IMG/VR virus record: IMGVR_UViG_3300028676_000003
Span: 304,550-368,549 of that record
DNA: 64,000 bases
Strand: one strand, 5' to 3'
Numbering within the stretch: position 1 is the stretch's first letter; each line of letters starts with the position of its first letter. A program made the translations under genes and the position numbers. Shown piece after piece: positions 36,879 to 59,794 of this stretch. The notes beneath the pieces were generated by a model. The model had not been told where the DNA came from. It saw nothing but the letters and a program-made list of their open reading frames with translations, and did not search any database.

Positions 36879-37334
36879 ATGGCAAAGGTAGTTGCATCGG
36901 GTGTTTTTATCGTAAGAAAAGATAAGAAATTACTAATATGTCACCCAACACATCATGACAAGGACTTTTTCAGCATCCCGAAAGGAAAGGTAGAAAAAGG
37001 AGAGACATTTTTAGAAGGTGCGATACGTGAAACGTTTGAAGAAACAAACATTCAATTGAGTGGAAGTAATGATTTTCACGTATTTCCTTTAAAATCAGTG
37101 AACTATAAACATAATAAGAAGGTAATACATCCTTACTTATTTATTGAGAAGTCTTCATCTAAGATTAATTGGGATGAAGTGGAAATAAAATGTAATTCAA
37201 ATGTTCCTGAAGACCGTGGCGGTTTTCCTGAAATGGATGGTTTTAGATGGGTTGATTTAGAAGAGTCTCGTAAATTCTTGCATGATACACAAGTAGCTTG
37301 TATTGATTCAATTAACGAAATATTAAATAAATGA
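36879..37334 (+). CDS. Nudix hydrolase
   Basis: IPKGKVEKGETFLEGAIRETFEET; FPEMD...W. Confidence 0.9.
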   Translation: MAKVVASGVFIVRKDKKLLICHPTHHDKDFFSIPKGKVEKGETFLEGAIRETFEETNIQLSGSNDFHVFPLKSVNYKHNKKVIHPYLFIEKSSSKINWDEVEIKCNSNVPEDRGGFPEMDGFRWVDLEESRKFLHDTQVACIDSINEILNK

Positions 37335-37549
37335 CACTAGATTTACACGGGACCAAACACCAAGACGTTAGAGGCGTATTTGATACCTTTATGTTCACAG
37401 CAATGCAGTCTGATACTGTAGAAGTTACAATCATAACAGGCAATTCAACTTCAATGAAGAAGATTACCAATGAGTGTATCGAGGAATATGGATTTACCAT
37501 TCTTCCATTTGAACCTAATATGGGTAGCATTAAAATTGCAATTAAATGA
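37331..37549 (+). CDS. stand-alone Smr domain
   Basis: TLDLHG, IITGNS, N.G.I. Confidence 0.75.
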   Translation: MTLDLHGTKHQDVRGVFDTFMFTAMQSDTVEVTIITGNSTSMKKITNECIEEYGFTILPFEPNMGSIKIAIK

Positions 37550-37824
37550 CGGACATAACTAAAGTAATTCCACCTTGGTTTGTTTATATGTTACAGTGTT
37601 CTGACGGAACGTATTATACTGGAATAACAAACAACATTCAAAGAAGATTTATTGAACATAATGAATCTAAAAACAAAGGTGCGAAATACACAAGAACTCG
37701 AAGACCACTTAAGATTGTTTATACAACAGTATTTTTAACAAGAAGTGAAGCGAGCAAAGAAGAATATAGAATAAAAAGGCTCACAAGAGCGCAAAAAATA
37801 GAATTAATAAATAAAAACAAATAA
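37546..37824 (+). CDS. GIY-YIG nuclease (UPF0213-like)
   Basis: FVYML.CSDGTYYTGIT, R...HN..KGAKYT. Confidence 0.88.
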   Translation: MTDITKVIPPWFVYMLQCSDGTYYTGITNNIQRRFIEHNESKNKGAKYTRTRRPLKIVYTTVFLTRSEASKEEYRIKRLTRAQKIELINKNK

Positions 37825-39108
37825 ATGGCAGACGTAAAAAAAGTATGGAATGACGAAGGCGGTAGATTATACCTATCACATCCATCAAGAGAATTTCCTT
37901 TGTTGGAAAATGCAATCTACACAATTGGTGTAGACCAACACGGAAGATTTTTCCTTTCAAAATCTAGTGATGGATTCACTTTCGACTACAAAATCTATGG
38001 TCTTGAAACGAAATTGGTAGAAAGAGCGATTAAAACTTACAGAACGACAAAAGGAAACTTAGGTATCTTATTGAACGGTTTGAAAGGTACTGGTAAAACA
38101 GTAAGTTCTAAGATTATCGCTAATAAATTGGAGCAACCAATTATCCTTGTAGACACTAAGTACGATGGTGTTCAGTTCTTCTTGAACTCAATCACACAAG
38201 ACATTACTATCTTCATTGATGAGTACGAGAAGGTATTTGGTGAAGCGGCTGGAATGCTTACTATCATGGATGGTGCGTCTAACTCTCAACACCGTAGAGT
38301 ATTCTTATTAACTACAAACGAGTTGTATGTTGATAGAAACCTTATCCAAAGACCAGGACGTGTTCGTTACTTGAAAAAGTTCGACGACTTGAAACCTGAA
38401 ATCGTAGAAGAAATCATCGACGATTGCTTGATTCACAAACAATTCAAAGGTGAGTTGTTAACATTTATCTCAGCATTGGAAACAATCACTGTAGATATCG
38501 TTAAAGCGGTTATTAGTGAGGTTAACATCCACGAAGAAGGACCATCTGCATTCGAAGATATCTTTAACGTTAAGAAACTTAGCGGTAGATACAACGTTAT
38601 GATTAGAGATGAGAATAACGACATGGTTGAATTGGCTACAAGTGCCGCAATCTACCCAAGACCAACATTTGGCGACAGACACGTTGGACACCGTTTCGAG
38701 ATTGACAACCAAAACATTGGTACTATCTCAAGAGTAATCAATTGGACAACTGTTGAAGTTTCTCCTTTTGAAACATCTAAAGGTAAAAAATTAGGGTTTG
38801 ATAAACCAATCATCCTTAAAATGGTAGATGCCGATATTACAAACTCAACGTTTGCGTATGACGGTTACGGAGTTTCACTTTTGGGTGATACACCAAAACC
38901 TAAACAATCTAGCTTAGGTAAGTCTCTTTTAGAGAAGCTTGAGTCTGATAACGATGCATACTACAACGAAGATGGTGACGAAGTAGATTCTTCTCCACAA
39001 CCAGTGTCTGAAGCTTCTTATCAATTACAAGCTGAAAGTGCGGTTAAAGTAGCAAGCAACGGAGTAATCTCATTTGATTCAAGTGCAGGTACCCTTACAA
39101 AAGGATAA
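37825..39108 (+). CDS. AAA+ ATPase
   Basis: GLKGTGKT, IFIDEYEK, LTTN, RPGR. Confidence 0.88.
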   Translation: MADVKKVWNDEGGRLYLSHPSREFPLLENAIYTIGVDQHGRFFLSKSSDGFTFDYKIYGLETKLVERAIKTYRTTKGNLGILLNGLKGTGKTVSSKIIANKLEQPIILVDTKYDGVQFFLNSITQDITIFIDEYEKVFGEAAGMLTIMDGASNSQHRRVFLLTTNELYVDRNLIQRPGRVRYLKKFDDLKPEIVEEIIDDCLIHKQFKGELLTFISALETITVDIVKAVISEVNIHEEGPSAFEDIFNVKKLSGRYNVMIRDENNDMVELATSAAIYPRPTFGDRHVGHRFEIDNQNIGTISRVINWTTVEVSPFETSKGKKLGFDKPIILKMVDADITNSTFAYDGYGVSLLGDTPKPKQSSLGKSLLEKLESDNDAYYNEDGDEVDSSPQPVSEASYQLQAESAVKVASNGVISFDSSAGTLTKG

Positions 39109-39113
39109 AACTA

Positions 39114-39148
39114 AATGGTGTGTGGGTAAAACTACACACCGTTTCTAA
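39114..39148 (+). terminator. hairpin, probable terminator
   Basis: AATGGTGTGT/ACACACCGTT stem, weak T-tail. Confidence 0.55.
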
Positions 39149-39157
39149 TTTAAAGAA

Positions 39158-39634
39158 ATGAATAAAGCAATAGAAATACAAGCTCCAAATCAAGTTCCAT
39201 TGACACATGGCCTATATGTGTTCTTAGGTGGTTCTATTGAAATGGGTAAAGCTATAGAATGGCAAAAAGAGGTTATTGAAACTCTTAAGGATGAAAACAT
39301 TGTGTTTTTAAATCCTCGTAGAGATGATTGGAACTCTGAATGGACCCAAACCATAACTGACCCTAACTTTAATGAACAAGTTACTTGGGAATTAAAAAGA
39401 TTAGAAGAATCTGACTTTATTGTTATGGTTATTGACCCAAACACTATCTCACCAATTACTCTTTTAGAGATTGGACTTCACGCTAGAAGCGGAAAGATGA
39501 TTGTTTGTTGTCCTGATGGGTTTTTTAGAAAAGGAAATGTTGATGTTACTGGACATTTTTATGGATATCCAGTTGTTGAAACACTAGAAGAAGTAATAGA
39601 AGCAATTCGTGAAAAATTAAATGGCAAAAAGTAA
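39158..39634 (+). CDS. nucleoside 2-deoxyribosyltransferase-like protein, second copy
   Basis: VFLGGSIEMG, EWQ, NPRRDDW, QV.WEL, SPITLLEIG. Confidence 0.8.
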   Translation: MNKAIEIQAPNQVPLTHGLYVFLGGSIEMGKAIEWQKEVIETLKDENIVFLNPRRDDWNSEWTQTITDPNFNEQVTWELKRLEESDFIVMVIDPNTISPITLLEIGLHARSGKMIVCCPDGFFRKGNVDVTGHFYGYPVVETLEEVIEAIREKLNGKK

Positions 39635-40115
39635 AAGACAACACAAATTAAACACTGAGATTACAGCTAAAGAAGTTCGTGTAACTGACTTGGGTGTAGT
39701 AGCACTGGCAGTAGCTTTAAAAGAAGCTTCATCAAAGGAAATGGACCTTGTTCTTATCAATGAGAACGCAGTTCCACCAGTTTGTAAGATTATGAACTAT
39801 GAGAAGTTCATCTATGAGCAAAGCAAGAAACCTAAGAATAAGGGTCTTGATGTGAAAGAAATCAAATTGGGTCCTAATACGTCTGAAAATGACTTGGAGT
39901 ACCGTATCAAACACATGATTGATTTCTTGAAAAAGGGTCATAAGGTAAAGATAAGTCTTCAATTCAGAGGTCGTCAAATGCAACACATCAACATAGGACA
40001 AGAACAAATCCTAAAGCTAATGGTTGCAGTTGAAGAATTTGGAACAGCCGAGGCAATGCCTAAGTTAGAAGGAAAGAAAATGTTTGCTATGATTAAGCCA
40101 AAACCTAGCAAATAA
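39621..40115 (+). CDS. infC: translation initiation factor IF-3
   Basis: MDLVLI...PPVCKIMNYEKF.YE, KEIKL.P, FL.KG.KVK..L.FRGR. Confidence 0.92.
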   Translation: MAKSKRQHKLNTEITAKEVRVTDLGVVALAVALKEASSKEMDLVLINENAVPPVCKIMNYEKFIYEQSKKPKNKGLDVKEIKLGPNTSENDLEYRIKHMIDFLKKGHKVKISLQFRGRQMQHINIGQEQILKLMVAVEEFGTAEAMPKLEGKKMFAMIKPKPSK

Positions 40116-40117
40116 GG

Positions 40118-40146
40118 TTGACATAAATAAAAATTATGTTTATACT
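40118..40146 (+). promoter_or_regulatory. canonical TTGACA-17-TATACT promoter (overlaps -7-like TACTTGTG)
   Basis: exact hexamers with 17-nt spacer. Confidence 0.55.
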
Positions 40147-40151
40147 TGTGT

Positions 40152-40592
40152 ATGGAAGATTACATATACAACTATTTAACAGAGAATTTTAACGTTGAAA
40201 CCAGTCAGGTTGGAAACGATGGAATATATCGTTTAGACGACAAAAATACACACAAAACACCAATAGATGGGGATAAACTCGTAGCAGAGATTATCGCCAT
40301 TTTTGGCTTACAAGTAGAAGAGGTCTTACTTTTCATACATTTATGGAGCTGTAAGATAAAAAATGATATTGACTTAGATTTCTATTGGAAAAATAATTGG
40401 GAAGTTTTTCATAATGTAGAATTCCCAGTGGTTCATAGAGTTCATGCTACAACCATAGCTTCAGACCTTGTTCCTGTACAACCAATGTCTGCACCTAGTG
40501 ATATTCTTTACCATATTGAGACCATTGAACCTAAAGATACTCTTTATATCAAATATAAAAAGATACTTGAGGGATTACAACATATTTATTAA
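40152..40592 (+). CDS. hypothetical protein with T4 gp23 Gol-like segment
   Basis: FPVVHRVHATTIASDLVPVQPMSAP; N-terminal YL..NF motif shared with 45546 and 54091. Confidence 0.65.
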   Translation: MEDYIYNYLTENFNVETSQVGNDGIYRLDDKNTHKTPIDGDKLVAEIIAIFGLQVEEVLLFIHLWSCKIKNDIDLDFYWKNNWEVFHNVEFPVVHRVHATTIASDLVPVQPMSAPSDILYHIETIEPKDTLYIKYKKILEGLQHIY

Positions 40593-40622
40593 AAGATATT
40601 TGGCAAATCCAAATATTATTAA

Positions 40623-40630
40623 TACCTTTG
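40623..40630 (+). promoter_or_regulatory. Bacteroidota -7 box TACCTTTG
   Basis: TTTGGC upstream; ATG 3 nt downstream. Confidence 0.75.
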
Positions 40631-40633
40631 CAA

Positions 40634-41023
40634 ATGAAATTTAGAACGTATAAAACAAGAGAAGAGAAACTAAAGCAAACGCTTAAGGGACTTCTCTTAA
40701 ATAAAACAGTAAATCAAGATAATTTAGATGGAGTAATCAAGACTATCAATGACTACGAAAAGAATAACTTAGATACAATCGAAAAATTAAAGAAAGATAA
40801 GTTACTCGAAACAAAAAGAATAAGCGGTGCTTTAAAACAAACAATCAACGCTCATGGACCTATCACTAACAATCTTATTGGAAGTGCAACAAAACGAATC
40901 TATGGAGCCTTATTACATAAGCCTGAAAAGAGAACACATATAAACCTTGATATTGGTACATTTATCCTAATACTTATTGCAACAGTATTATTAACAGTCG
41001 CCAGTATCGTAATACTAATATAA
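40634..41023 (+). CDS. protein with C-terminal membrane anchor
   Basis: helical body plus terminal TM segment. Confidence 0.65.
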   Translation: MKFRTYKTREEKLKQTLKGLLLNKTVNQDNLDGVIKTINDYEKNNLDTIEKLKKDKLLETKRISGALKQTINAHGPITNNLIGSATKRIYGALLHKPEKRTHINLDIGTFILILIATVLLTVASIVILI

Positions 41024-41547
41024 TGAAAAAAATAAAAAAACTTGCTATTTTCGATTTTGACGGAACACTTGTTGACACTCCACTACCTGATATTGGGAGA
41101 CTTACGTATCAAGATAAGACGGGAAAAGCCTGGCCTCATGAGGGATGGTGGGGTAGAGAATTAAGCCTTGATATGGATATCTTTGATATGCCAATTGTTC
41201 CACAAGTAATTGAAGATTACCAAAAGGAGAAGTTAGAAGACTCTACTGCTCTAATTATGCTTACTGGTCGTATGACCAAGCTAAGGGATTCAGTTGTCAA
41301 GATTCTTGATTCACATAGTCTAGAATTTCATGAATATCACTACAACCGTGGTGGAGCTACTGAAGTTGCTAAGATTAAAACAATGGAACAACTTCTTGAA
41401 AAGTACCTTCATGTTGAAGAAATCGCAATGTGGGATGATAGAGAAGCGCATATCGCCATTTTTCAAAAATGGGGTGATGAACAAATCAGACAAGGAAATA
41501 TTAAGAGTTTCCAAATAACTCATATTCCAGCAGATAGACATAAATAA
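41023..41547 (+). CDS. Swiss-Army-knife RNA-repair-like HAD phosphatase
   Basis: IFDFDGTL..TP, WW, LTGR, MWDDR..H. Confidence 0.8.
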   Translation: MKKIKKLAIFDFDGTLVDTPLPDIGRLTYQDKTGKAWPHEGWWGRELSLDMDIFDMPIVPQVIEDYQKEKLEDSTALIMLTGRMTKLRDSVVKILDSHSLEFHEYHYNRGGATEVAKIKTMEQLLEKYLHVEEIAMWDDREAHIAIFQKWGDEQIRQGNIKSFQITHIPADRHK

Positions 41548-41551
41548 TACG

Positions 41552-41577
41552 AAAGCCACTGTTTTAGTGGCTTTTTT
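41552..41577 (+). terminator. intrinsic terminator
   Basis: AAAGCCACT/AGTGGCTTT plus T-run. Confidence 0.8.
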
Positions 41578-41602
41578 ATTTGCACAGAACCTAAATAAGT
41601 TG

Positions 41603-41610
41603 TACCTTTG
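41603..41610 (+). promoter_or_regulatory. Bacteroidota -7 box TACCTTTG
   Basis: TTTGCA upstream; ATG 3 nt downstream. Confidence 0.75.
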
Positions 41611-41613
41611 TAT

Positions 41614-41919
41614 ATGGATAAATATGAAAGACTAAAAGGAGAGTTAAGTGAAGTGAAACATGGGAAGATGAAAGCCTTTGGAAATTCCATGACACCCATA
41701 ATAAAAAGTGGGTCCCTGCTTACATTTAATTCTAAAGACAAATACGAAGTCAATGACATTGTATTTTGTAAGGTTAAAGGCCGATATATCGATGCTCATA
41801 AAATTATCAAGGTTGATGAACAAAAGGGTTATCTGATTGCTAATAACAAAGGACATGAAAATGGATGGACTAGAACCATCTTCGGTTATGTTGTTGAAGT
41901 AGAAGCTCCTAAGAAATGA
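41614..41919 (+). CDS. S24/S26 peptidase-like protein
   Basis: GNSM.P.I..G, DIV, HKI. Confidence 0.65.
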   Translation: MDKYERLKGELSEVKHGKMKAFGNSMTPIIKSGSLLTFNSKDKYEVNDIVFCKVKGRYIDAHKIIKVDEQKGYLIANNKGHENGWTRTIFGYVVEVEAPKK

Positions 41920-42074
41920 GACTAGGTAGAATAATAATCTCCTTTATTGAGACAAGAGAGATTGGTGATGATTTGAATCATCAAATCCTTGATAGAGTAA
42001 GTGTTTCTATTTGGGTTAGAAAACGAAAAAGCCTAATAGATGTAATAAAAATTAACCCAATTACTATATTATGA
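41916..42074 (+). CDS. MxLG-family micro-protein, 52 aa (MRLGR; not in track)
   Basis: ATGA overlap at both ends. Confidence 0.6.
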   Translation: MRLGRIIISFIETREIGDDLNHQILDRVSVSIWVRKRKSLIDVIKINPITIL

Positions 42075-42220
42075 AAATAGGTAAAATGATTGATTCAAAC
42101 GTTTCAAAAAGATGTATGGGTTATGAGATAGAGTCTCAAATGTTTAAGGAAGCTTCATCAGAAGTTTGGGGTCCTAGGATAACACGAGTATTTGAAATAA
42201 ATCGAATTAGATTTATATGA
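42071..42220 (+). CDS. MxLG-family micro-protein, 49 aa (MKIGK; not in track)
   Basis: ATGA overlap at both ends. Confidence 0.6.
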   Translation: MKIGKMIDSNVSKRCMGYEIESQMFKEASSEVWGPRITRVFEINRIRFI

Positions 42221-42378
42221 AACTAGGACTTAATGTATATGAAAAGGCTTACAAGGCTAAAACAAGCATCCATGATTTACTTTTAAGTGAAAGAATTGAA
42301 ATGCCTTGCTTTGGTATCTTAGAGTGGATAGAACAAACTAGTATGTTCGTCGCTATTCCTTTGGTTAGAATATTATAA
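42217..42378 (+). CDS. MxLG-family micro-protein, 53 aa (MKLGL; not in track)
   Basis: ATGAAACTAGGA. Confidence 0.6.
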   Translation: MKLGLNVYEKAYKAKTSIHDLLLSERIEMPCFGILEWIEQTSMFVAIPLVRIL

Positions 42379-42393
42379 TTTAAAATAAAGAAA

Positions 42394-42906
42394 ATGATTG
42401 ATAATTCAATAAGAGAAACACTATCTAAATTAGATGGTAATTATAAATTTAACGATTTGTTAACATTTATGGAAGACTCAGGTATAACCTTTTATGACAG
42501 AGGGTTAAACAATGCTTTGGGTCTTACAACACTTGATGGAATTTATTTAGATTTGAGTATGATGCGTTATTTTGGTGATAGGCTTACATTTTTTATTATC
42601 CTTCACGAAATAGCTCATTATAAGAGAATTGCGAGATACGGTGGTAATTGGTTGATTGAAAAATTAAGCGTTGCTGACTACGAAACGTTCCTAAATGGAA
42701 TTTATGAAGAAGAAATCATTGCAGATAGATATGCTTGTCAAATGTTCTATAGATTGAATAGAGATATTTATTTATGGAAACATACTCAACAATTAAACTT
42801 GGTTGAAAATCAAGAGAAGTATCAAGTTGCGGCAAATACGTATTACGGCAAGATTCAAAACGACGAAACAAAATACAGATTATTAATTGAACAGTTTATT
42901 AAATGA
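42394..42906 (+). CDS. HExxH metallopeptidase-like (ImmA/IrrE-like)
   Basis: ILHEIAH ... EE..AD.YA. Confidence 0.65.
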   Translation: MIDNSIRETLSKLDGNYKFNDLLTFMEDSGITFYDRGLNNALGLTTLDGIYLDLSMMRYFGDRLTFFIILHEIAHYKRIARYGGNWLIEKLSVADYETFLNGIYEEEIIADRYACQMFYRLNRDIYLWKHTQQLNLVENQEKYQVAANTYYGKIQNDETKYRLLIEQFIK

Positions 42907-43175
42907 AAAACCAACTAACGTTCTTTAAGATTATAAAAGGCATAGTTAAATTGCCAGTTTTACCAATTGTAATTATGATACCATTGTATTGTATTTACAA
43001 AATTCTGAAGAATACATCAAGAACAGAATTAGAAATAATGGCCGACAAGGGTGAGAGTTATTACACACCTGAAATGAGTAAGTATTGTAAAGATATTGTA
43101 GAGAAGTATCGAGTTGTACTAAACTGTACCGCTATAATACTTTGGTGTGTAATTTTAAATGCTGTTTTAAGATAA
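42903..43175 (+). CDS. membrane protein
   Basis: two hydrophobic segments. Confidence 0.6.
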   Translation: MKNQLTFFKIIKGIVKLPVLPIVIMIPLYCIYKILKNTSRTELEIMADKGESYYTPEMSKYCKDIVEKYRVVLNCTAIILWCVILNAVLR

Positions 43176-43508
43176 TGAGAAATAAAGGAATTAGCTGTGG
43201 TTCAACACCGCACGTAAGCAAAACTGGAAAGTGGCAAGGAGTATTCTACGATTCATCATTAAAGAAATCTATGCATTTAGGTTTTTTTTGATAATAAGTT
43301 AGAAGCTCAAAAGGTTGTTGATGATGCTGTATTTGAGTATTATTCAACAAGAAACTATCTTTTACCAAAAGGAATCACTCTGACTAAAAGCGAGAAAGTA
43401 TTTAGGTATACCGTAACAGTTCAGAACAAGACAGTCCATGTTGGTCAAGCCAAAAGGCTTAAAGATATACTAAAAATAAGATTAGATTTTATAACAGGTT
43501 TGTTATAA
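43175..43508 (+). pseudogene. AP2-domain DNA-binding protein interrupted by +1 frameshift in a T8 run
   Basis: KWQG.F.....HLGFF/DNKLEAQKVVD..; with T7 the gene is a 110-aa ORF. Confidence 0.6.
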
Positions 43509-43523
43509 AGAAAAAAGAAATAT

Positions 43524-45515
43524 ATGATTGAAATTAATGATATCCTACAAGGAAGAATTAGCGTTAATGCTAGTGGTTCTGCGTACTTGGTAAGCCCCGA
43601 TTTACCAAAAGACATTTATCTACACAAGTCTAACACTAACAAAGCGTTACACTTAGATACTGTAAAAATAAGAATAATTGAAGGTAAAGACAATAGTCGT
43701 AAACTTGAAGGTGAAGTAATAGAAATAGTTGAACGTTTTAGAACTGAGTTCGTTGGAGTAATCCAAATAAACGCTAAACATGCTTTCTTCATTCCTGATA
43801 GTAGAAAACTCATCAATGACTTCTTTATTCCAAAAGATAAATTGCTTGGAGCAACTGATGGACAAAAAGTAATTGTTAGACTTACTGAATGGAAAGACGA
43901 TGCCAAGAACCCTAACGGTGAAATTATCCGTATTCTTGGGAACGCTGGTGAACACGAAACTGAAATTCACGCTATCCTTGAAGAATATGGTTTACCATAT
44001 GACTTCGAAGAAGATGTACTTGCCGAAGCTAGAGCAATCCCTATTGAAATCCCACAAGCAGAAATTGACAAGCGTAGAGATATGCGTGATGTTATTACAT
44101 TCACTATCGACCCTGCTGATGCTAAGGATTTCGATGATGCTTTAAGTGTTGAATGGGTTAACGGTGAATTGTTCCTTGGTGTTCACATTGCCGATGTATC
44201 TCACTACTTAAGACCTGATACTGAATTAGATAAAGAAGCCTATGCAAGAGGAACAAGTGTTTATCTTGTTGATAGATGTGTGCCAATGCTTCCTGAGAAC
44301 TTATCAAACGGATTATGTTCGTTAAGACCACATGAAGATAAGTTATGTTTCTCAGCTGTATTCAAGTTGGACCATAACGGAAGTGTTCTTGAAGAGTGGT
44401 TTGGTAAAACAGTAATCAACTCTAATCATAGATTCTCTTATGAGCAAGCTCAAGAAATCATTGAAGCTGAAAAAGGTTCAACAACTCTTATTTACAAACC
44501 AAGAGGTAATGGTCCTTCAATAGGACCACACCACGAAGAAATTGCTAATGTTAACAAATGTTTCCAAGCAATTCGTGACTTGAACAAGATTGCTCAGAAG
44601 ATGCGTAAAGCTCGTCTTAAACATGGTGCCTTATCATTTGATAAACAAGAGGTTAAGTTTGACCTAGATGAAAACAATAAACCTATAGGTATCAAGTTTA
44701 AGACTGCTAAGGATTCTAACAAGCTTATTGAAGAATTTATGCTTCTAGCTAACAAGCATGTTGCACAATTCATCAATAAAAAGGAATTACCTAACGTAAA
44801 CAGGTCTCACGATAAACCTAACGAAGCTAAAGTAGAAGCTCTTAAGGAGTTTGTTAAGCAATTTGGGTATGAAGTGAAGAATTCTAGCCCTGAAGAGACT
44901 ACTAAGTCCCTTAATCAGTTGCTAAAAGACGTTAGAGGTACTGCCGAAGCTGATATGATTGATAATCTAGTAGTAAGAACAATGCAAAAAGCTACATATA
45001 GCACAAAAAACATTGGTCACTACGGTCTTGGGTTCAAAGATTACTCACATTTCACTTCTCCTATTAGAAGATATCCTGATGTAATCATTCATAGACTACT
45101 TGGAATGTATTTAGACACTGAAAGAGTATCTAAAACTGTTCCTAAGATAGAAAAGCTAGAAGGAAGATGCTTACATTTATCTGAAAGAGAGAAAAAAGCA
45201 CAAAAAGCGGAGCGTGATTCAATAAAATACATGCAATGTATCTATATGAGTGAGAATATTGGTAAGGTTTTCCAAGGAATTATCAGTTCTGTAACAGAAT
45301 ATGGTATTTTTGTAGAGATTTTAGAGAATAAATGCGAAGGACTTATCAAATTATCTAATATTGAAGGTGATGCTTATACAGTAGACATGAATAATTATAC
45401 TGTTAAAGGATATAACACTGGTAAAAAGCTTAGACTAGGTGATGTAGTACATGTAATTGTATCTAGTGTTGATATAGAGAAAAAAAATATCAATCTATCA
45501 TTGATTAATTTGTAG
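43524..45515 (+). CDS. rnr: ribonuclease R
   Basis: TIDP.DAKDFDDA, VHIADVSHY, RGTSVY, IEEFMLLAN, HFTSPIRRYPD, C-terminal S1. Confidence 0.95.
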   Translation: MIEINDILQGRISVNASGSAYLVSPDLPKDIYLHKSNTNKALHLDTVKIRIIEGKDNSRKLEGEVIEIVERFRTEFVGVIQINAKHAFFIPDSRKLINDFFIPKDKLLGATDGQKVIVRLTEWKDDAKNPNGEIIRILGNAGEHETEIHAILEEYGLPYDFEEDVLAEARAIPIEIPQAEIDKRRDMRDVITFTIDPADAKDFDDALSVEWVNGELFLGVHIADVSHYLRPDTELDKEAYARGTSVYLVDRCVPMLPENLSNGLCSLRPHEDKLCFSAVFKLDHNGSVLEEWFGKTVINSNHRFSYEQAQEIIEAEKGSTTLIYKPRGNGPSIGPHHEEIANVNKCFQAIRDLNKIAQKMRKARLKHGALSFDKQEVKFDLDENNKPIGIKFKTAKDSNKLIEEFMLLANKHVAQFINKKELPNVNRSHDKPNEAKVEALKEFVKQFGYEVKNSSPEETTKSLNQLLKDVRGTAEADMIDNLVVRTMQKATYSTKNIGHYGLGFKDYSHFTSPIRRYPDVIIHRLLGMYLDTERVSKTVPKIEKLEGRCLHLSEREKKAQKAERDSIKYMQCIYMSENIGKVFQGIISSVTEYGIFVEILENKCEGLIKLSNIEGDAYTVDMNNYTVKGYNTGKKLRLGDVVHVIVSSVDIEKKNINLSLINL

Positions 45516-50603: not shown

Positions 50604-51299
50604 ATGAAAATTTTAGCCCTAGGCGATACACATGGACGTGTATTATGGAAAGATATTGTTCAAAAAGAACAAGACTACGACAAAATCATCTTTATTGGTG
50701 ACTATTTTGACTCTCGTGAAGGTGTTTCACCACAAACACAACTTGAAAACTTCAGAGATATCCTTGAATTCAAGAAAAATAACATGGATAAAGTAGTTTT
50801 ATTACTAGGAAACCACGATTTTCACTACTTAAAAGAAGCGCAAGAGAAATATTCTCAGTATCAAATGCCAATGTTCAACCTTTTTAACGATGAAATACAA
50901 CCTGCGGTTGAATATTCACTTGTTCAAGTGTGTTTTGTACATGGTAATTACGTTTTTACACATGCTGGTGTTACAAAAACTTGGGCTACCGACTATAATA
51001 TCGATATAAATGACCTAGAGAACTCAATAAATACTCTTTTATTGGAGAATCCTAGTGCTTTTAGGTTCCATATGGGTACAAATTTCAGTAATAGTGGAGA
51101 TGATAAGGACCAATCACCTATATGGGTGCGTATTCCGTCCTTATTAGCAGACCCCCTACCTGAAGTAACCTATATAGTAGGACATACTACACTACTAGAG
51201 CTTACTATGATACAAAACCTTATAGGTATAGATACCCTAGGTACTACAGGGGAATACCTCATTATTGAAGACAACGTGCCAAGAGCAGAAAAATTATAA
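50604..51299 (+). CDS. calcineurin-like metallophosphoesterase
   Basis: LGDTHG, IGDYFD, LGNHD, THAG, VGHT. Confidence 0.9.
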   Translation: MKILALGDTHGRVLWKDIVQKEQDYDKIIFIGDYFDSREGVSPQTQLENFRDILEFKKNNMDKVVLLLGNHDFHYLKEAQEKYSQYQMPMFNLFNDEIQPAVEYSLVQVCFVHGNYVFTHAGVTKTWATDYNIDINDLENSINTLLLENPSAFRFHMGTNFSNSGDDKDQSPIWVRIPSLLADPLPEVTYIVGHTTLLELTMIQNLIGIDTLGTTGEYLIIEDNVPRAEKL

Positions 51300-51301
51300 A
51301 T

Positions 51302-51490
51302 ATGGATATAGGTAAAAGGATTGACGGTGATATAGGCATAGGTAAAATTCGTAATCGTCTATCTGATGAATCAACAAGACAGGTTATTTACTCTCTTGAT
51401 ATCGATGTTTTCACTGATTTCTTTAACGAATTATACGATGTTGAAGAAATAACGTTAATTATTGAAGAATCATTTGGAATATCAATTTAA
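51302..51490 (+). CDS. MxLG-family micro-protein (MDIGK)
   Basis: ATGGATATAGGTAAA. Confidence 0.55.
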   Translation: MDIGKRIDGDIGIGKIRNRLSDESTRQVIYSLDIDVFTDFFNELYDVEEITLIIEESFGISI

Positions 51491-51514: not shown

Positions 51515-51865
51515 ATGAACAACATGAAAAAAACACTTATAATTTTAAGCATAATAGCACTTGTTAGCTGTAAAAAGGTACCTAACAATGAACAGACCCT
51601 TGTAATTACTGTTGACGAATACAATCGTCTTAAAGATGGAACAGCTGTTTCATACCCGAAGCCATTCGAATATATCGATTATGATGATTTGATTGAAAAT
51701 GGTAAGAGTGGTATTGTCTTAGGTACTGATGGACATGAATTTATTGTGAATAAAAAAGGTTTTGATAGAGAAACTTTTGTTCATTCTCCTGAGTGTCCAA
51801 AGTGCGAAGCTAAGCTTAAAGAAATCATCTATCAAATTACCAAAGAAAAAGATTCAATAAAATGA
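51515..51865 (+). CDS. lipoprotein, paralog A
   Basis: LVSC lipobox; GTDGHEF, HSPECPKC. Confidence 0.7.
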   Translation: MNNMKKTLIILSIIALVSCKKVPNNEQTLVITVDEYNRLKDGTAVSYPKPFEYIDYDDLIENGKSGIVLGTDGHEFIVNKKGFDRETFVHSPECPKCEAKLKEIIYQITKEKDSIK

Positions 51866-53179: not shown

Positions 53180-54091
53180 ATGAAACAAATCAAAATTTCG
53201 CATAAACTTACTGATAGAAGTAACGAAGCTTTTAAACAATACTTAAGAGAAATTGCGGATATAGAACCTTTTACCCCTGAAGAAGAATTGGTTTGCGCTC
53301 AAAAAGCCTTTGCTGGTGATAAAAAAGCACAAAAAGAATTAGCGAAAAGAAACCTACGTTTCGTTGTGAGTGTTGCTAAGCAATACGTTACAGATTCTTT
53401 ATATCTATCTGACCTAGTGGAAGAAGGAAACATTGGAATCCTTATTGCGGCTGAAAAGTTTGACCCAAGCAAAGGATATAAGTTTATTTCGTTTGCTGTA
53501 TGGTGGATTAGAAAGATAATCCTTGAACACATTGCCAAGCATGGTAAGATTGTTCGTTTACCTGCCAATAAGCTTAACGCAATGTCAAAGCTTGATAAAC
53601 AATTTGCAGAATTGGAACAAAAGACTGGTCGTAAGGTAGATGTAATGGAAGTTATTGCCGAGTTTGGTAGCAACTCCGATGCCTACAATACCCAACAAGA
53701 CGAGTTTAAGGAGTTTATGTTCTTGGATTCATTAGGTTCAATGAACACAGATTCGCTAGACCGTCAGATTGGTAATGAAGACAACGGTGGAACTAGTACC
53801 CTTGCTGAGATGATGAGTGATGATATGTTTAAATCTACAGACCACTTAATCACAGACAAGAACATCATCGATGAAATCAATATTGCTCTTGAAACACTTA
53901 AGCCTCGTGAGAAGAGAATCATTGAATCATTCTTTGGTTTAAATGACCAAAAGGTTATGACACTTAAGGAATTAGGTGAAGATGATGGAATCAGAGTAAC
54001 ACGTGAAATGGTTCGTCAAATTAAAAATAAGACGCTTAAAGCGTTACAAAATAATCCTAGGATTAGACAAGCATATGAGTCAATGAACTAA
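53180..54091 (+). CDS. rpoD: sigma-70 factor, Bacteroidota RpoD-like (no region 1.1)
   Basis: YLREI, NLRFVVSVAKQY, DL..EGNIG..AAEKFD..KG.KFISFAVWWIR, TL.E.G...TRE.VRQI. Confidence 0.9.
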   Translation: MKQIKISHKLTDRSNEAFKQYLREIADIEPFTPEEELVCAQKAFAGDKKAQKELAKRNLRFVVSVAKQYVTDSLYLSDLVEEGNIGILIAAEKFDPSKGYKFISFAVWWIRKIILEHIAKHGKIVRLPANKLNAMSKLDKQFAELEQKTGRKVDVMEVIAEFGSNSDAYNTQQDEFKEFMFLDSLGSMNTDSLDRQIGNEDNGGTSTLAEMMSDDMFKSTDHLITDKNIIDEINIALETLKPREKRIIESFFGLNDQKVMTLKELGEDDGIRVTREMVRQIKNKTLKALQNNPRIRQAYESMN

Positions 54092-54411
54092 TGAAAGAAA
54101 TCATACACAAATTTTTAACAGATAACTTCTATATGGATTTATCTACCTTTTCTTCTTATTGCCTGAAAGAGTCAGGTAATCATAATAGTATTTATTTAAA
54201 ACTAATATACAATAAGTTAGGTAAAATATTTGGGTATGAGCCTGACAGTGATGAATTGATTGATATTGTCTCAGAATGGAACACCCAACAAATCGCTATA
54301 CTAACCCGTAAGATTAACCATATAAAGTACAGGTTGTATAGCGATACTGGTTCTGATAAGGTGGAATTAGATGAGATGTGCAAGCTTATTAAAGAATTTG
54401 AATTTGAGTAA
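54091..54411 (+). CDS. hypothetical protein (YL..NF family)
   Basis: IIHKFLTDNF. Confidence 0.6.
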   Translation: MKEIIHKFLTDNFYMDLSTFSSYCLKESGNHNSIYLKLIYNKLGKIFGYEPDSDELIDIVSEWNTQQIAILTRKINHIKYRLYSDTGSDKVELDEMCKLIKEFEFE

Positions 54412-59115: not shown

Positions 59116-59439
59116 ATGGATAAATTAACAAACTTAGAAAAGGTAAACGCTTATACTGTAAACATATCAGTTGATGAATATGATTGTAAAGATACTGGCC
59201 TATATAACACCCACGCTATTGCTACTGAAAAAGCTAAACGTGCAGGTTGGTATGGAAGTGACGGAACTGTTAAGCAACTAGAGAATATCTACGTTGATGA
59301 TGAAGGGATTCTTTATAGTGTTAACAAGCTAGGAATGTTTACTGACGTAAAAGAAGCCAAAGATAAGGAGCTTCTTGAATCTATTCAATCCAAGCTAACC
59401 CCTGAAGAATTGGAGTTTGCGAAAAAAGTTTTAAAATAA
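59116..59439 (+). CDS. phage hypothetical protein
   Basis: GWYGSDG; KLTPEE. Confidence 0.65.
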   Translation: MDKLTNLEKVNAYTVNISVDEYDCKDTGLYNTHAIATEKAKRAGWYGSDGTVKQLENIYVDDEGILYSVNKLGMFTDVKEAKDKELLESIQSKLTPEELEFAKKVLK

Positions 59440-59474
59440 TTCCAGGAAAACTTGCAGGAACCAGGATTTATCCC

Positions 59475-59482
59475 TACCTTTG
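59475..59482 (+). promoter_or_regulatory. Bacteroidota -7 box TACCTTTG
   Basis: CTTGCA upstream. Confidence 0.78.
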
Positions 59483-59506
59483 TACTATCAAATTAAAACA
59501 AGTATT

Positions 59507-59794
59507 ATGAAAAACTTATATATTACAAAACAGAGATTCTTAGAGTGGTATTACGAAGATGGTGAAGGTACTACTGAATATGAGTCACTACGTCTTGAAT
59601 TAGCTGAAAAGGTAATTGAAAGACTTAAAGAAGGGAATTCGGCTACCATAACAACAGAAGAAATCTTCAACGATATGTGTAACCAAAAAGCAATAAGACT
59701 TTATTTTTGTGTTGGTTACGATGAAGATACTGACAGAAACGATTTTGAATTGCAAGATTGTGGGTTTGAATATACATTAACTTTAATTGACTAA
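59507..59794 (+). CDS. hypothetical protein
   Basis: ATG 59507. Confidence 0.65.
   Translation: MKNLYITKQRFLEWYYEDGEGTTEYESLRLELAEKVIERLKEGNSATITTEEIFNDMCNQKAIRLYFCVGYDEDTDRNDFELQDCGFEYTLTLID

What the first reader, a model, noticed from the sequence alone, without database searches (positions are those of the whole stretch)
40152..40592. Gol-peptide-like capsid motif inside a small non-capsid protein
Seen: FPVVHRVHATTIASDLVPVQPMSAP (40422-40502) in a 146-aa ORF. It aligns without gaps to the T4 gp23 Gol region as I recall it (AVMGMVRRAIPNLIAFDICGVQPMNSPTG): about 10 identities, including IA.D...VQPM..P. Known: Gol binds EF-Tu and activates the Lit protease, and major capsid proteins trigger several defences. 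Inference: a stand-alone capsid mimic acting as decoy for capsid-sensing immunity or as an EF-Tu binder. It follows infC and has the window's only TTGACA-17-TATACT promoter.
Basis: partly seen in the sequence, partly recalled or inferred. Interest (0 to 1): 0.72.

Follow-up and report, generated by a model that had tools for sequence, protein, structure and literature searches.

The report
Small phage protein mimicking capsid segments
A 146-residue protein of an uncultured 369-kb peat phage has a conserved domain of unknown fold followed by a floppy tail that copies the most conserved stretch of the major capsid protein (the T4 'Gol' segment). It belongs to a large undescribed family whose tails are patchworks of capsid and head-protease pieces, which looks like deliberate mimicry of head proteins, though its function is untested.

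Summary
ORF 40152-40592 (146 aa) carries at residues 86-126 a segment homologous to the Gol region of gp23-type major capsid proteins (MCPs). It shares 15 of 36 residues with this phage's own MCP (E 4e-7) and 10 with T4 gp23 96-122.

It is not an isolated curiosity. The gene is one of at least 166 cluster representatives of small proteins, seen only in metagenomes. They share an orphan N-terminal domain of about 85 aa and a tail predicted to be disordered.

The tails are mosaics of the most conserved blocks of head proteins: MCP N-arm (Gol), MCP propeptide, MCP C-terminus and the N-terminal half of the prohead protease.

A paralogue elsewhere in this genome carries the MCP spine-helix block. 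In another phage the two types are adjacent genes whose stop and start codons overlap.

The gene always follows infC in its clade. It evolves much faster than its neighbours and than the MCP, and it has a Bacteroidota-type promoter abutting the ATG.

The 'stand-alone capsid mimic' reading is supported. The partner (EF-Tu, an immune sensor or the assembly machinery) is untested; the one co-fold job gave no answer. No description was found in the literature searched.

The parts
40118..40149 (+). Promoter-like element. It reads as TTGACA-N17-TATACT, or equally as a Bacteroidota-type TTG-N20-TATACTTG. The -10/-7 box ends 3-5 nt before the ATG, so the mRNA would be leaderless or nearly so.
   Evidence: Exact match is unique in the window. 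It is conserved in L005 and replaced by TTTACT-N17-TACAAT in L006-L009. The paralogue P0009 has the same architecture, TTGACT-N17-TATATT-TGTGT-ATGGAA. It belongs to a class of 21 such sites in the genome. No transcript data: no RNA run was listed.
40152..40592 (+). CDS of the 146-aa protein P0001, including the TAA stop.
   Evidence: Orthologues sit at the same syntenic position in 17 or more contigs. dN/dS is 0.28 against a 93%-identical relative.
40152..40406 (+). N-terminal domain, residues 1-85. It is a conserved orphan alpha-beta-beta-alpha-alpha domain, with the hallmark Y-x-YL...VGNDGIY...IF...W...DLxFYW.
   Evidence: AF2 pLDDT is about 80 and about 90 in relative P0104. It is the shared module of at least 166 cluster representatives. 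It is homologous to the N-domain of the P0009 family (hhalign 94.5%, E 7.8e-8). No match in Pfam, NCBIfam or the fold libraries.
40407..40529 (+). MCP-derived segment, residues 86-126. It is homologous to own-MCP residues 70-105 and to T4 gp23 96-137, which includes the Gol peptide region 93-122.
   Evidence: The region has pLDDT below 50, so it is predicted disordered on its own.
40530..40589 (+). Short C-terminal helix, residues 127-146. It is cut short by a TAA relative to orthologues, which continue with ...NIYYRILGLFKNN.
   Evidence: Comparison with L095/L015 and P0003. After the stop the same frame still reads KIFGKSKYY.
40599..40633 (+). Promoter-like element of the downstream gene: TTTG ... 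TACCTTTG, then 3 nt, then the ATG at 40634. In orthologues this DNA lies inside the 3' end of the family gene and produces the apparent peptide motifs 'RIFGIFKN' and 'YLHISNYNTTFV'.
39621..40115 (+). infC (translation initiation factor IF3), the invariant upstream neighbour.
   Evidence: Pfam IF3_N and IF3_C. Adjacent in all 12 IMG/VR loci and in L005-L009 and L120.
40634..41023 (+). 129-aa protein with a C-terminal hydrophobic anchor, the invariant downstream neighbour. No family match.
54091..54411 (+). Second copy of the N-domain in the window: a 106-aa protein with no MCP-like tail.
   Evidence: Family HMM E 7e-9. N-domain HMM E 1.1e-9.

Best explanation
Shown.
- P0001 is a two-part protein: a conserved globular N-terminal domain of unknown fold, and a C-terminal tail predicted to be disordered.
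- The tail presents a copy of the most conserved linear block of gp23-type MCPs, the block that in T4 is the Gol peptide.
- It belongs to a large, fast-evolving family found only in metagenomes. The tails of the family string together conserved blocks of head proteins: MCP N-arm, propeptide, spine helix and C-terminus, and the N-half of the prohead protease.
- The gene lies in an accessory translation/RNA-repair region behind its own host-type promoter, not in the head module.

Inferred.
- The protein works by molecular mimicry of newly made, not yet assembled head proteins.
- The tail occupies the site on a cellular factor that normally binds this block of the nascent MCP. The N-domain supplies a second activity: blocking, tethering or modifying that factor.
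- The only binder of this block with experimental backing is EF-Tu (domains II-III, GDP form, in T4). EF-Tu plus MCP is what Lit and Avs7 survey.
- My preferred reading is therefore a counter-defence decoy or competitor at the EF-Tu/MCP-sensor interface, made before or alongside the MCP.
For: Homology and its conservation.

Tail disorder: pLDDT below 50 in P0001, and in the MCP-derived pieces of relative P0104. This fits a linear motif that folds on a partner.

Mosaic tails. Fragments match the own MCP propeptide (E 7e-11) and C-terminus (E 1.2e-10). They also match the head maturation protease, phrog_207, at E 1.6e-6.

Paralogues and pairing. P0009 carries MCP residues 369-427 behind the same N-domain and the same promoter architecture. 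In L107 the two types are adjacent genes with overlapping stop and start codons.

Conflict-type evolution.
- Orthologues are 36-52% identical, against 55-79% for IF3, about 70% for RNase R and 80-86% for the MCP.
- Tail content differs between orthologues at the same locus.
- There is a recombination patch over the motif.

Neighbourhood: NUDIX, Smr, GIY-YIG, AAA, nucleoside deoxyribosyltransferase-like, IF3, HAD_SAK_1 (RNA repair) and RNase R.

The motif keeps the residues conserved across all gp23-type MCPs rather than the own MCP's lineage-specific ones: 17-23 of 36 against 12-17 of 36. That is expected if the partner is a conserved cellular protein.

Background. [quoted passage not shown] Avs7 senses newly made MCP together with EF-Tu, and several Avs families sense MCPs (preprint 10.64898/2026.01.04.697583).
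Against: - No interaction has been shown.
- A tail that keeps the activating motif could trigger a Lit-like sensor instead of blocking it.
- EF-Tu binding does not explain the protease, propeptide and C-terminal fragments in relatives.
- The time of expression is unknown: there is only a promoter-like sequence, and no RNA run was listed.
- The host is unknown and probably Bacteroidota, where no Lit- or Avs7-type capsid sensing has been documented to my knowledge.
- Being nearer to a consensus than to one sequence is partly a statistical effect.
- Disorder in AF2 models built from shallow alignments (7 and 12 rows) is weak evidence.
Confidence: 0.35

Rival explanations
1. Assembly-directed mimic. 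The head-protein blocks let the small proteins dock on the phage's own prohead machinery (scaffold core, protease or unassembled MCP). They could regulate or delay assembly or protease activation. They could carry the N-domain into the prohead as cargo, as a capsid-targeting sequence does. Or they could act as dominant-negative poisons of the heads of competing gp23-type phages.
For: - The retained pieces are those used in assembly. The propeptide ends exactly at the L-x-E protease site in P0046, P0099 and P0104.
- The three MCP pieces kept are the pre-E-loop strand, the post-E-loop strand plus spine helix, and the C-terminal strands. These correspond to the three segments of the HK97 P domain (established knowledge of the fold, my inference).
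- Protease fragments keep the NRNGRxY, GELDHP and GVSSR motifs.
- The N-arm type and spine-helix type occur as an overlapping adjacent gene pair in L107.
- The own MCP has departed from the canonical motif (VQAM, FFVP) while the small proteins keep VQPM and LDF. That would fit self-immunity to a poison aimed at rival phages.
Against: - The gene lies far from the head module (344.7 kb against 88-92 kb), among translation and RNA-metabolism genes.
- It has a host-type promoter of the same class as many non-structural small genes.
- It evolves far faster than the MCP and shows no covariation with it.
- AF2 does not fold the MCP pieces into a P-domain-like unit.
Confidence: 0.27
2. Chaperone targeting. 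The Gol-containing N-terminal part of gp23 has been reported to direct proteins to GroEL (Snyder and Tarkowski 2005, from my own knowledge; not in the searchable library). The tail would deliver the N-domain to the host chaperonin, or compete for it, so tuning folding capacity for the 66-kDa MCP.
For: - The tail is the homologue of the gp23 region involved.
- The tails are unfolded core segments of two proteins, the kind of thing chaperones bind.
- The phage encodes no Cpn10/gp31-like co-chaperonin detectable by Pfam.
Against: - Chaperonin binding is not sequence-specific enough to explain near-invariant D-L-V-x-V-Q-P-M...P.
- There is no direct evidence.
- The literature basis rests on memory only.
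Confidence: 0.1
3. Domesticated debris. The functional unit is the N-domain. The tails are remnants of head-gene fragments captured by illegitimate or homing-endonuclease-driven recombination and serve only as linkers or spacers that also hold the downstream promoter.
For: - Homing endonuclease genes are inserted at variable places around the locus (L097, L100-L102).
- There is patchy recombination within the gene.
- N-domain-only paralogues exist.
- Two tail 'motifs' turned out to be DNA-level promoter elements.
- P0001 has lost its last 9 or so codons.
Against: - Neutral remnants would decay uniformly. Instead the same residues that are conserved in real MCPs stay conserved in 110 divergent tails (V 95%, P 96%, P+6 98%).
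- Nucleotide identity to the own MCP gene is only 59%, so gene conversion is not refreshing them.
- dN/dS in the motif is 0.16.
Confidence: 0.1
4. Chance resemblance of a short hydrophobic peptide to gp23, with no common origin.
For: Taken alone, P0001 is below Pfam's gathering score (21.1 against 24.4 bits). Against the PDB the family profile reaches only E 0.07.
Against: - Pairwise E is 4e-7 against the own MCP.
- The family HMM hits the own MCP at 9e-11.
- 102 of 142 relatives match Pfam Gp23, down to 3.8e-19.
- Relatives carry further, independent MCP and protease blocks.
Confidence: 0.01

Closest known systems
Gol peptide of T4 gp23 (residues 93-122), with EF-Tu and the Lit protease of prophage e14
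   Same: The tail segment is the sequence homologue of this region: it aligns to T4 gp23 96-137. Like the 29-residue Gol peptide, it is a linear stretch that need not be part of a folded capsid protein. Gol binds EF-Tu domains II/III and is the most conserved part of gp23 (PMC3014915).
   Different: In T4, Gol is an internal part of the capsid protein itself, not a separate gene product. Here it hangs on an unrelated domain, is made from its own promoter, and is found in a phage of a probably Bacteroidota host. Neither EF-Tu binding nor any Lit-like response was tested.
gp23/gp24-type major capsid and vertex proteins (Pfam PF07068, HK97 fold)
   Same: Shares about 40 residues of the N-arm/first P-domain strand. 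Paralogue P0009 shares the E-loop return strand and spine helix. Relatives share the propeptide and C-terminal strands.
   Different: No A domain, no insertion domain and no complete P domain. It is 146 aa against 608 aa, is predicted disordered, and lies outside the head module. It is not a capsid protein.
T4 internal proteins and Alt with their capsid-targeting sequence
   Same: Small non-structural cargo joined to a short peptide that relates it to the prohead core and protease. Some relatives end exactly at an L-x-E protease-site motif.
   Different: The T4 targeting sequence is a 10-residue N-terminal peptide unrelated to gp23. Here the head-derived part is C-terminal, 40-150 residues long and copied from MCP and protease. 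Packaging was not tested. This comparison rests on my own knowledge of T4.
Viral pseudosubstrate and decoy mimics (poxvirus K3L copying eIF2alpha; phage Ocr copying DNA), and satellite capsid-redirecting proteins that are MCP homologues (PICI Ccm)
   Same: A truncated, fast-evolving copy of a protein that something else recognises. It keeps the contact residues and drops the rest.
   Different: Those mimic a host molecule or a helper phage's whole fold. Here a phage copies short blocks of its own kind of head proteins. No target is known. This comparison is from my own knowledge, not from a tool.
phrog_12830 (128-position PHROG labelled 'major head protein')
   Same: The weak match covers part of the N-domain and the motif: residues 33-120 to profile positions 40-126, E 0.041. 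Two relatives match at 1e-4. It may be a small-protein family of the same design.
   Different: The match is too weak to claim membership. No GenBank phage showed the N-domain by tblastn.

Membership tests
Gp23-type major capsid protein (Pfam PF07068, HK97 fold) | Score at or above the Pfam gathering threshold over most of the 376-position profile | tested here: not met
   21.1 bits against a cut-off of 24.4. Only profile positions 4-44 are matched.
Gp23-type major capsid protein (Pfam PF07068, HK97 fold) | Complete HK97 fold: N-arm, E-loop, P domain with spine helix, and A domain | tested here: not met
   146 aa. Only 36-41 residues align to the 608-aa own MCP. That stretch is predicted disordered. 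No fold match to capsid proteins.
Gol-type peptide (functional class defined in T4) | Sequence homologous to gp23 residues 93-122 | tested here: met
   The family profile aligns to T4 gp23 96-137. 10 identities for P0001 against the T4 sequence printed. Consensus comparison.
Gol-type peptide (functional class defined in T4) | Binds EF-Tu domains II-III and thereby licenses Lit cleavage | not testable with these tools
Host EF-Tu is unknown. This needs pull-down, ITC or a Lit assay.
New family: N-domain plus head-protein-mimic tail | N-terminal domain of about 85 aa with Y-x-YL ... IF ... W ... FYW | tested here: met
   Profile search: 166 representatives at E<=1e-10, P0001's cluster representative (P0002, 93% identical) top at 1.1e-68. 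N-domain HMM E 1.4e-33.
New family: N-domain plus head-protein-mimic tail | C-terminal tail beginning with the MCP N-arm block FP..RV...TI..DLVxVQPM..P.G.L.Y.DY | tested here: met
   Present in P0001 and in 110 of 155 listed members.
New family: N-domain plus head-protein-mimic tail | Conserved position between infC and a small C-terminally anchored protein (within this phage clade) | tested here: met
   All 12 IMG/VR loci and L005-L009 and L120.
T4 gp21-type prohead protease (Peptidase_S77 / phrog_207) | NRNGRxY, GELDHP and GVSSRG motifs within a domain of about 200 aa | tested here: not met
   P0001 has none. The own protease finds no second copy in the genome. Relatives carry only a shortened N-terminal half.
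Phage anti-defence decoy | Expressed early, binds and neutralises a host sensor | tested here: inconclusive
   Only a host-type promoter-like sequence is available. No RNA run was listed. No PADLOC search or anti-defence library comparison was run. Binding is not testable here.
Capsid-targeted internal protein (T4 IP/Alt type) | Short N-terminal targeting peptide removed by the prohead protease; present in virions | tested here: inconclusive
   The N-terminus is a folded domain, not a targeting peptide. The head-derived part is C-terminal. No proteomics exist for this uncultured phage.

The most novel reading that the evidence does not exclude
Large gp23-type phages of soil and water carry a dispersed set of small 'self-mimic' genes. 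Each presents conserved linear blocks of the phage's head proteins (MCP propeptide, Gol/N-arm, spine helix, C-terminus, and prohead protease) on a common orphan domain. These would act as baits that neutralise whatever in the cell watches for newly made head proteins: EF-Tu-linked sensors of the Lit/Avs7 kind, satellites, or rival phages. This would be a new class of counter-defence based on copying the phage's own molecular patterns.
Probability: 0.3. Interest if true: 0.85.

Novelty: categorically new. Interest (0 to 1): 0.74.

Why it matters
Bacterial immunity is now known to watch for conserved phage structural proteins: Lit with the Gol peptide and EF-Tu, CapRel, and Avs7/8/10 for MCPs. 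How phages answer, other than by point mutation of proteins that can hardly change, is largely open.

A widespread family that copies exactly those unchangeable blocks onto a separate, fast-evolving small protein would be a direct candidate answer.

It would also give a handle on an old question: why the Gol region binds EF-Tu at all.

Even if the function proves to be assembly control or inter-phage interference, the design has no described precedent in the literature I could search. That design is an orphan domain plus a patchwork of head-protein core segments, in several paralogues per genome.

It is also a practical warning for annotation. These proteins are picked up as 'Gp23 / major head protein' by Pfam and PHROGs, although they are not capsid proteins.

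Tried and rejected
- **Co-fold of P0001 with paralogue P0009.** This tested a 'split mini P-domain'. The result was no answer, score 0.00, controls not run. It is no evidence either way.
- **Autonomous fold of the MCP pieces.** In P0104 the N-arm and C-terminal blocks come out disordered (pLDDT below 50). Only the N-domain and the propeptide helices are confident. The idea that the pieces form a P-domain on their own is not supported.
- **Fold searches.** Both models found nothing above noise in PDB by Foldseek, PDB by VIA wide, BFVD or AFDB clusters. The ESM Atlas look-up was uninformative.
- **N-domain versus MCP propeptide.** A local likeness (TSQVGNDGIY against TSGQVGNIGL) prompted an hhalign test. 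Probability was 0.3%, so it was rejected.
- **Recent DNA duplication or gene conversion from the MCP gene.** Rejected: 59% nucleotide identity, 53% at third positions.
- **Diversity-generating retroelement as the cause of the divergence patch.** Rejected: the substitutions are not adenine-specific.
- **Other tblastn 'MCP-like' spots in the genome.** They fall in a tape-measure-like protein and a ClpB-like protein and are chance.
- **Hits of P0001 in GenBank phages.** All are real MCPs (RsoM2USA and RAS14 'hypothetical' proteins of 411 and 462 aa) or spurious (a phosphoglycerate kinase in a 'Listeria phage' contig). N-domain queries found nothing.
- **First IMG/VR scan.** It was swamped by true MCPs.
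- **Tail motifs 'YLHISNYNTTFV' and 'NIYxRIFGIFKN'.** These are not head-derived. They encode the -33 and -7 boxes of the downstream gene's promoter.
- **Expression data.** No RNA sequencing run was listed, and read laying was not used.
- **Phage-encoded partners.** Neither a Cpn10/gp31-like gene nor an EF-Tu gene was found in the phage.
- **Literature.** Searches for capsid decoys or mimics in phages returned nothing relevant.

Full report
**Setting.** The window is the last 64 kb (304550-368549) of a 368,549-bp IMG/VR virus record, 33.6% G+C. The record is found in peat, soil and freshwater metagenomes. The phage has a gp23-type major capsid protein (MCP) of 608 aa at 90626-92452 and a T4 gp21-type prohead protease at 88450-89181. 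Its MCP is closest to uncultured huge phages and, among cultured ones, to Flavobacterium phage 'immuto'. Recurrent TTG-N19-TAnnTTTG boxes in front of genes match the Bacteroidota promoter consensus (established knowledge), so the host is probably of that phylum.

- ORF 40152-40592 encodes 146 aa. The quoted peptide is residues 91-115 (40422-40496).
- Pfam's Gp23 model matches residues 86-126 at E 2.4e-4, just under its curated threshold.
- The phage's own MCP matches at 15/36 identities, E 4e-7.
- A family HMM finds the own MCP at 9e-11.
- The only solved structures hit by the family profile are T4 gp23, residues 96-137, which covers the Gol region.

**It is a family, not a one-off.**
- A word-index search found six relatives.
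- A profile search of 1.84 billion cluster representatives found 966 hits at E<=1e-3 and 166 at E<=1e-10. Every one of the 150 best hits listed is 71-250 aa long.
- The relatives share an N-terminal domain of about 85 residues. AF2 models it with fair to good confidence as alpha-beta-beta-alpha-alpha.
- This domain has no match in Pfam, NCBIfam or four structure libraries. It is not related to the MCP propeptide.
- The region after it is predicted disordered.
- In 110 of 155 listed members the tail begins with the block FP..RV.A.TI..DLVxVQPM.AP.G.L.YLDY.Y.
- That consensus agrees with the consensus of 74 true MCPs at about 20 of 36 positions. V, P and P+6 are conserved at 95-98%.
- 102 of 142 members match Pfam Gp23, down to E 3.8e-19.

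**The tails are patchworks of head-protein blocks.** After the N-arm block, different members continue in different ways.
- Some carry the MCP C-terminal block GYVFAPYIP...ITSRYA..VNPNFY. P0104 matches own-MCP residues 540-596 at E 1.2e-10.
- Some carry the MCP propeptide block KW..SGLLDGL...LYE.Q..QLLE. P0099 matches own-MCP residues 15-58 at E 7e-11. Several of these stop exactly at the L-x-E motif that T4-type proteases cut (T4 knowledge).
- Some carry a shortened N-terminal half of the prohead protease with NRNGRVY, GELDHP and GVSSRK. This matches phrog_207 at 1.6e-6 and the own protease at 1.2e-5.
- Two further apparent tail motifs are DNA-level features: the -33 and -7 boxes of the downstream gene's promoter lying inside the 3' end of the ORF.

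P0001 itself has only the N-arm block and a short helix. A TAA removes the last nine or so codons that orthologues have.

**Paralogues carry other MCP pieces.**
- In this genome a 209-aa protein at about 260.3 kb (P0009) matches MCP residues 369-427, the E-loop return strand and spine helix, at 39% identity and E 1e-8.
- Its N-terminal part is homologous to the P0001 N-domain (hhalign 94.5%, E 7.8e-8).
- Its gene has the same start architecture, TTGAC(A/T)-N17-TATA(C/T)T-TGTGT-ATGGAA.
- Two more copies have the N-domain only. One is in the window at 54091-54411.
- In a more distant phage (L107), a spine-helix-type gene and an N-arm/C-terminus/propeptide-type gene are adjacent with overlapping stop and start codons. 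This suggests the two types act together.
- Related genomes also hold a stand-alone propeptide-like ORF and a C-terminal-block ORF.
- Within G000, a screen of all small ORFs against all large ones found these two MCP cases and only two other local likenesses.

**Context and evolution.**
- In its clade the gene always sits between infC and a small C-terminally anchored protein. The block around it holds NUDIX, Smr, GIY-YIG, AAA, nucleoside deoxyribosyltransferase-like, HAD_SAK_1 (RNA repair), Peptidase_S24-like and RNase R genes.
- Orthologues are only 36-52% identical. IF3 is 55-79% identical, RNase R about 70% and the MCP 80-86%.
- Tail composition differs between orthologues at the same locus.
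- Against a 93%-identical relative, 16 of the 20 nucleotide substitutions fall in nt 273-370, the motif and the few codons after it. The 85-codon N-domain has no synonymous change, although IF3 next door has dS 0.23. This is a recombination patch.
- Homing endonuclease genes are inserted at variable places nearby.
- Selection on the motif is purifying: dN/dS 0.16 in the motif and 0.28 overall.
- The MCP's own Gol-equivalent block is essentially invariant in four related genomes and has lineage-specific residues (VQAM, NMPIG, FFVP).
- The small proteins do not follow these residues. They keep the generic gp23 consensus: 17-23 of 36 against 12-17 of 36 to the own MCP.
- Nucleotide identity to the own MCP gene is 59%, so the likeness is old and is maintained at the protein level.

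**What it most likely does.** The shown facts are these:
- an orphan domain plus a disordered tail;
- a tail made of the least changeable blocks of head proteins;
- several paralogues per genome;
- fast evolution with recombination;
- a location in an accessory region behind a host-type promoter.

They fit molecular mimicry of newly made head proteins. The only documented binder of the Gol block is EF-Tu, and Gol is the most conserved part of gp23 (PMC3014915). EF-Tu together with MCP is what Lit and Avs7 respond to, and several other Avs families sense MCP monomers (preprint 10.64898/2026.01.04.697583).

I therefore rank first a decoy or competitor acting at that interface, at 0.35. An assembly-directed role comes second at 0.27. 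That role could be regulation, targeting into the prohead, or poisoning of rival gp23-type phages. Chaperone targeting and 'domesticated debris' follow at 0.1 each. Chance is excluded.

The co-fold of P0001 with P0009 gave no answer, and no transcript data were available.

**Comparison with the known.** The protein is not a capsid protein: it fails the Pfam threshold and lacks the fold. It is not a protease. It cannot yet be filed as an anti-defence protein.

It is a sequence homologue of the Gol peptide placed in a new setting. No GenBank phage carries the N-domain, no curated family covers it, and the literature searches returned no description.

I rate the family and its design as categorically new, with the function open.

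Noticed in passing
window 54091-54411 (+): A 106-aa protein with the same N-terminal domain as P0001 but no MCP-like tail (HMM E 1e-9). A fourth copy lies outside the window at G000 64112-63762 (-).
   Followed up: partly
window 3206, 35729, 40152, 40634, 41614, 51515 (gene starts); 21 sites genome-wide: A class of genes whose ATG lies close behind a Bacteroidota-type promoter (TTG-N17-21-TA(c/t)cTTTG), usually 3-5 nt behind but 11 nt at 51515. The short spacing implies leaderless or near-leaderless mRNAs. Several of these genes encode small proteins. The phage also encodes its own IF3, a factor that in E. coli discriminates against leaderless starts (my knowledge).
   Followed up: partly
window 36879-45515: A conserved block of translation, RNA-repair and nucleotide genes: NUDIX, Smr, a 92-aa GIY-YIG protein, AAA ATPase, nucleoside deoxyribosyltransferase-like, IF3, HAD_SAK_1, Peptidase_S24-like and a 663-aa RNase R/RNB protein. 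It is syntenic in at least 17 metagenomic contigs.
   Followed up: partly
window 40590-40619: The TAA that ends P0001 replaces a Tyr codon of orthologues. The same frame continues KIFGKSKYY, which resembles their ...YRILGLFKNN ending. So the last nine or so codons were lost recently. The 93%-identical relative L120 shares this.
   Followed up: yes
window 40424-40521 compared with L120 3273-3370: Between two otherwise near-identical genes, 16 of 20 substitutions cluster in the 100 nt covering the capsid-like motif and the codons just after it, while the first 270 nt have no synonymous change. This is a recombination patch or a swapped cassette.
   Followed up: partly
window 51269-51487 (+): A 62-aa ORF shares 20/51 residues (E 7e-7 pairwise) with residues 70-118 of an 801-aa repeat-rich, tail-fibre-like protein at G000 122950-125364. 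It may be another small ORF carrying a piece of a structural protein.
   Followed up: no
G000 65089-65439 and 150639-152141 (outside the window): A 113-aa protein and a 492-aa protein next to the tape-measure-like gene share an N-terminal motif, KKL.ITE.Q..RL.Q.IVE (19/41 identities). It may be a shared targeting or docking peptide.
   Followed up: no
G000 302528-303163 (just upstream of the window): A GIY-YIG homing endonuclease gene directly after a tRNA-like sequence, with the same TTGACT-N17-TATATT promoter type. Related endonuclease genes are inserted at different places around the infC locus in L097 and L100-L102.
   Followed up: no
L117 (G002 685-888) and L118 (G004 59403-59549): Related phages carry a roughly 60-aa ORF that is little more than an MCP propeptide copy (next to a tRNA-like sequence), and a roughly 115-aa ORF ending in the MCP C-terminal block, at other loci.
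   Followed up: partly
G000 88450-89181 (own prohead protease, residues 40-82): The protease's N-terminal stretch PFINEIKKLDGGNRLAIVEPLIVFVVLQKYGILNRNGRIYP aligns loosely with the MCP N-arm block followed by NRNGRxY in family tails (BLAST alignments). Whether MCP and protease share an ancient N-terminal motif was not tested.
   Followed up: no
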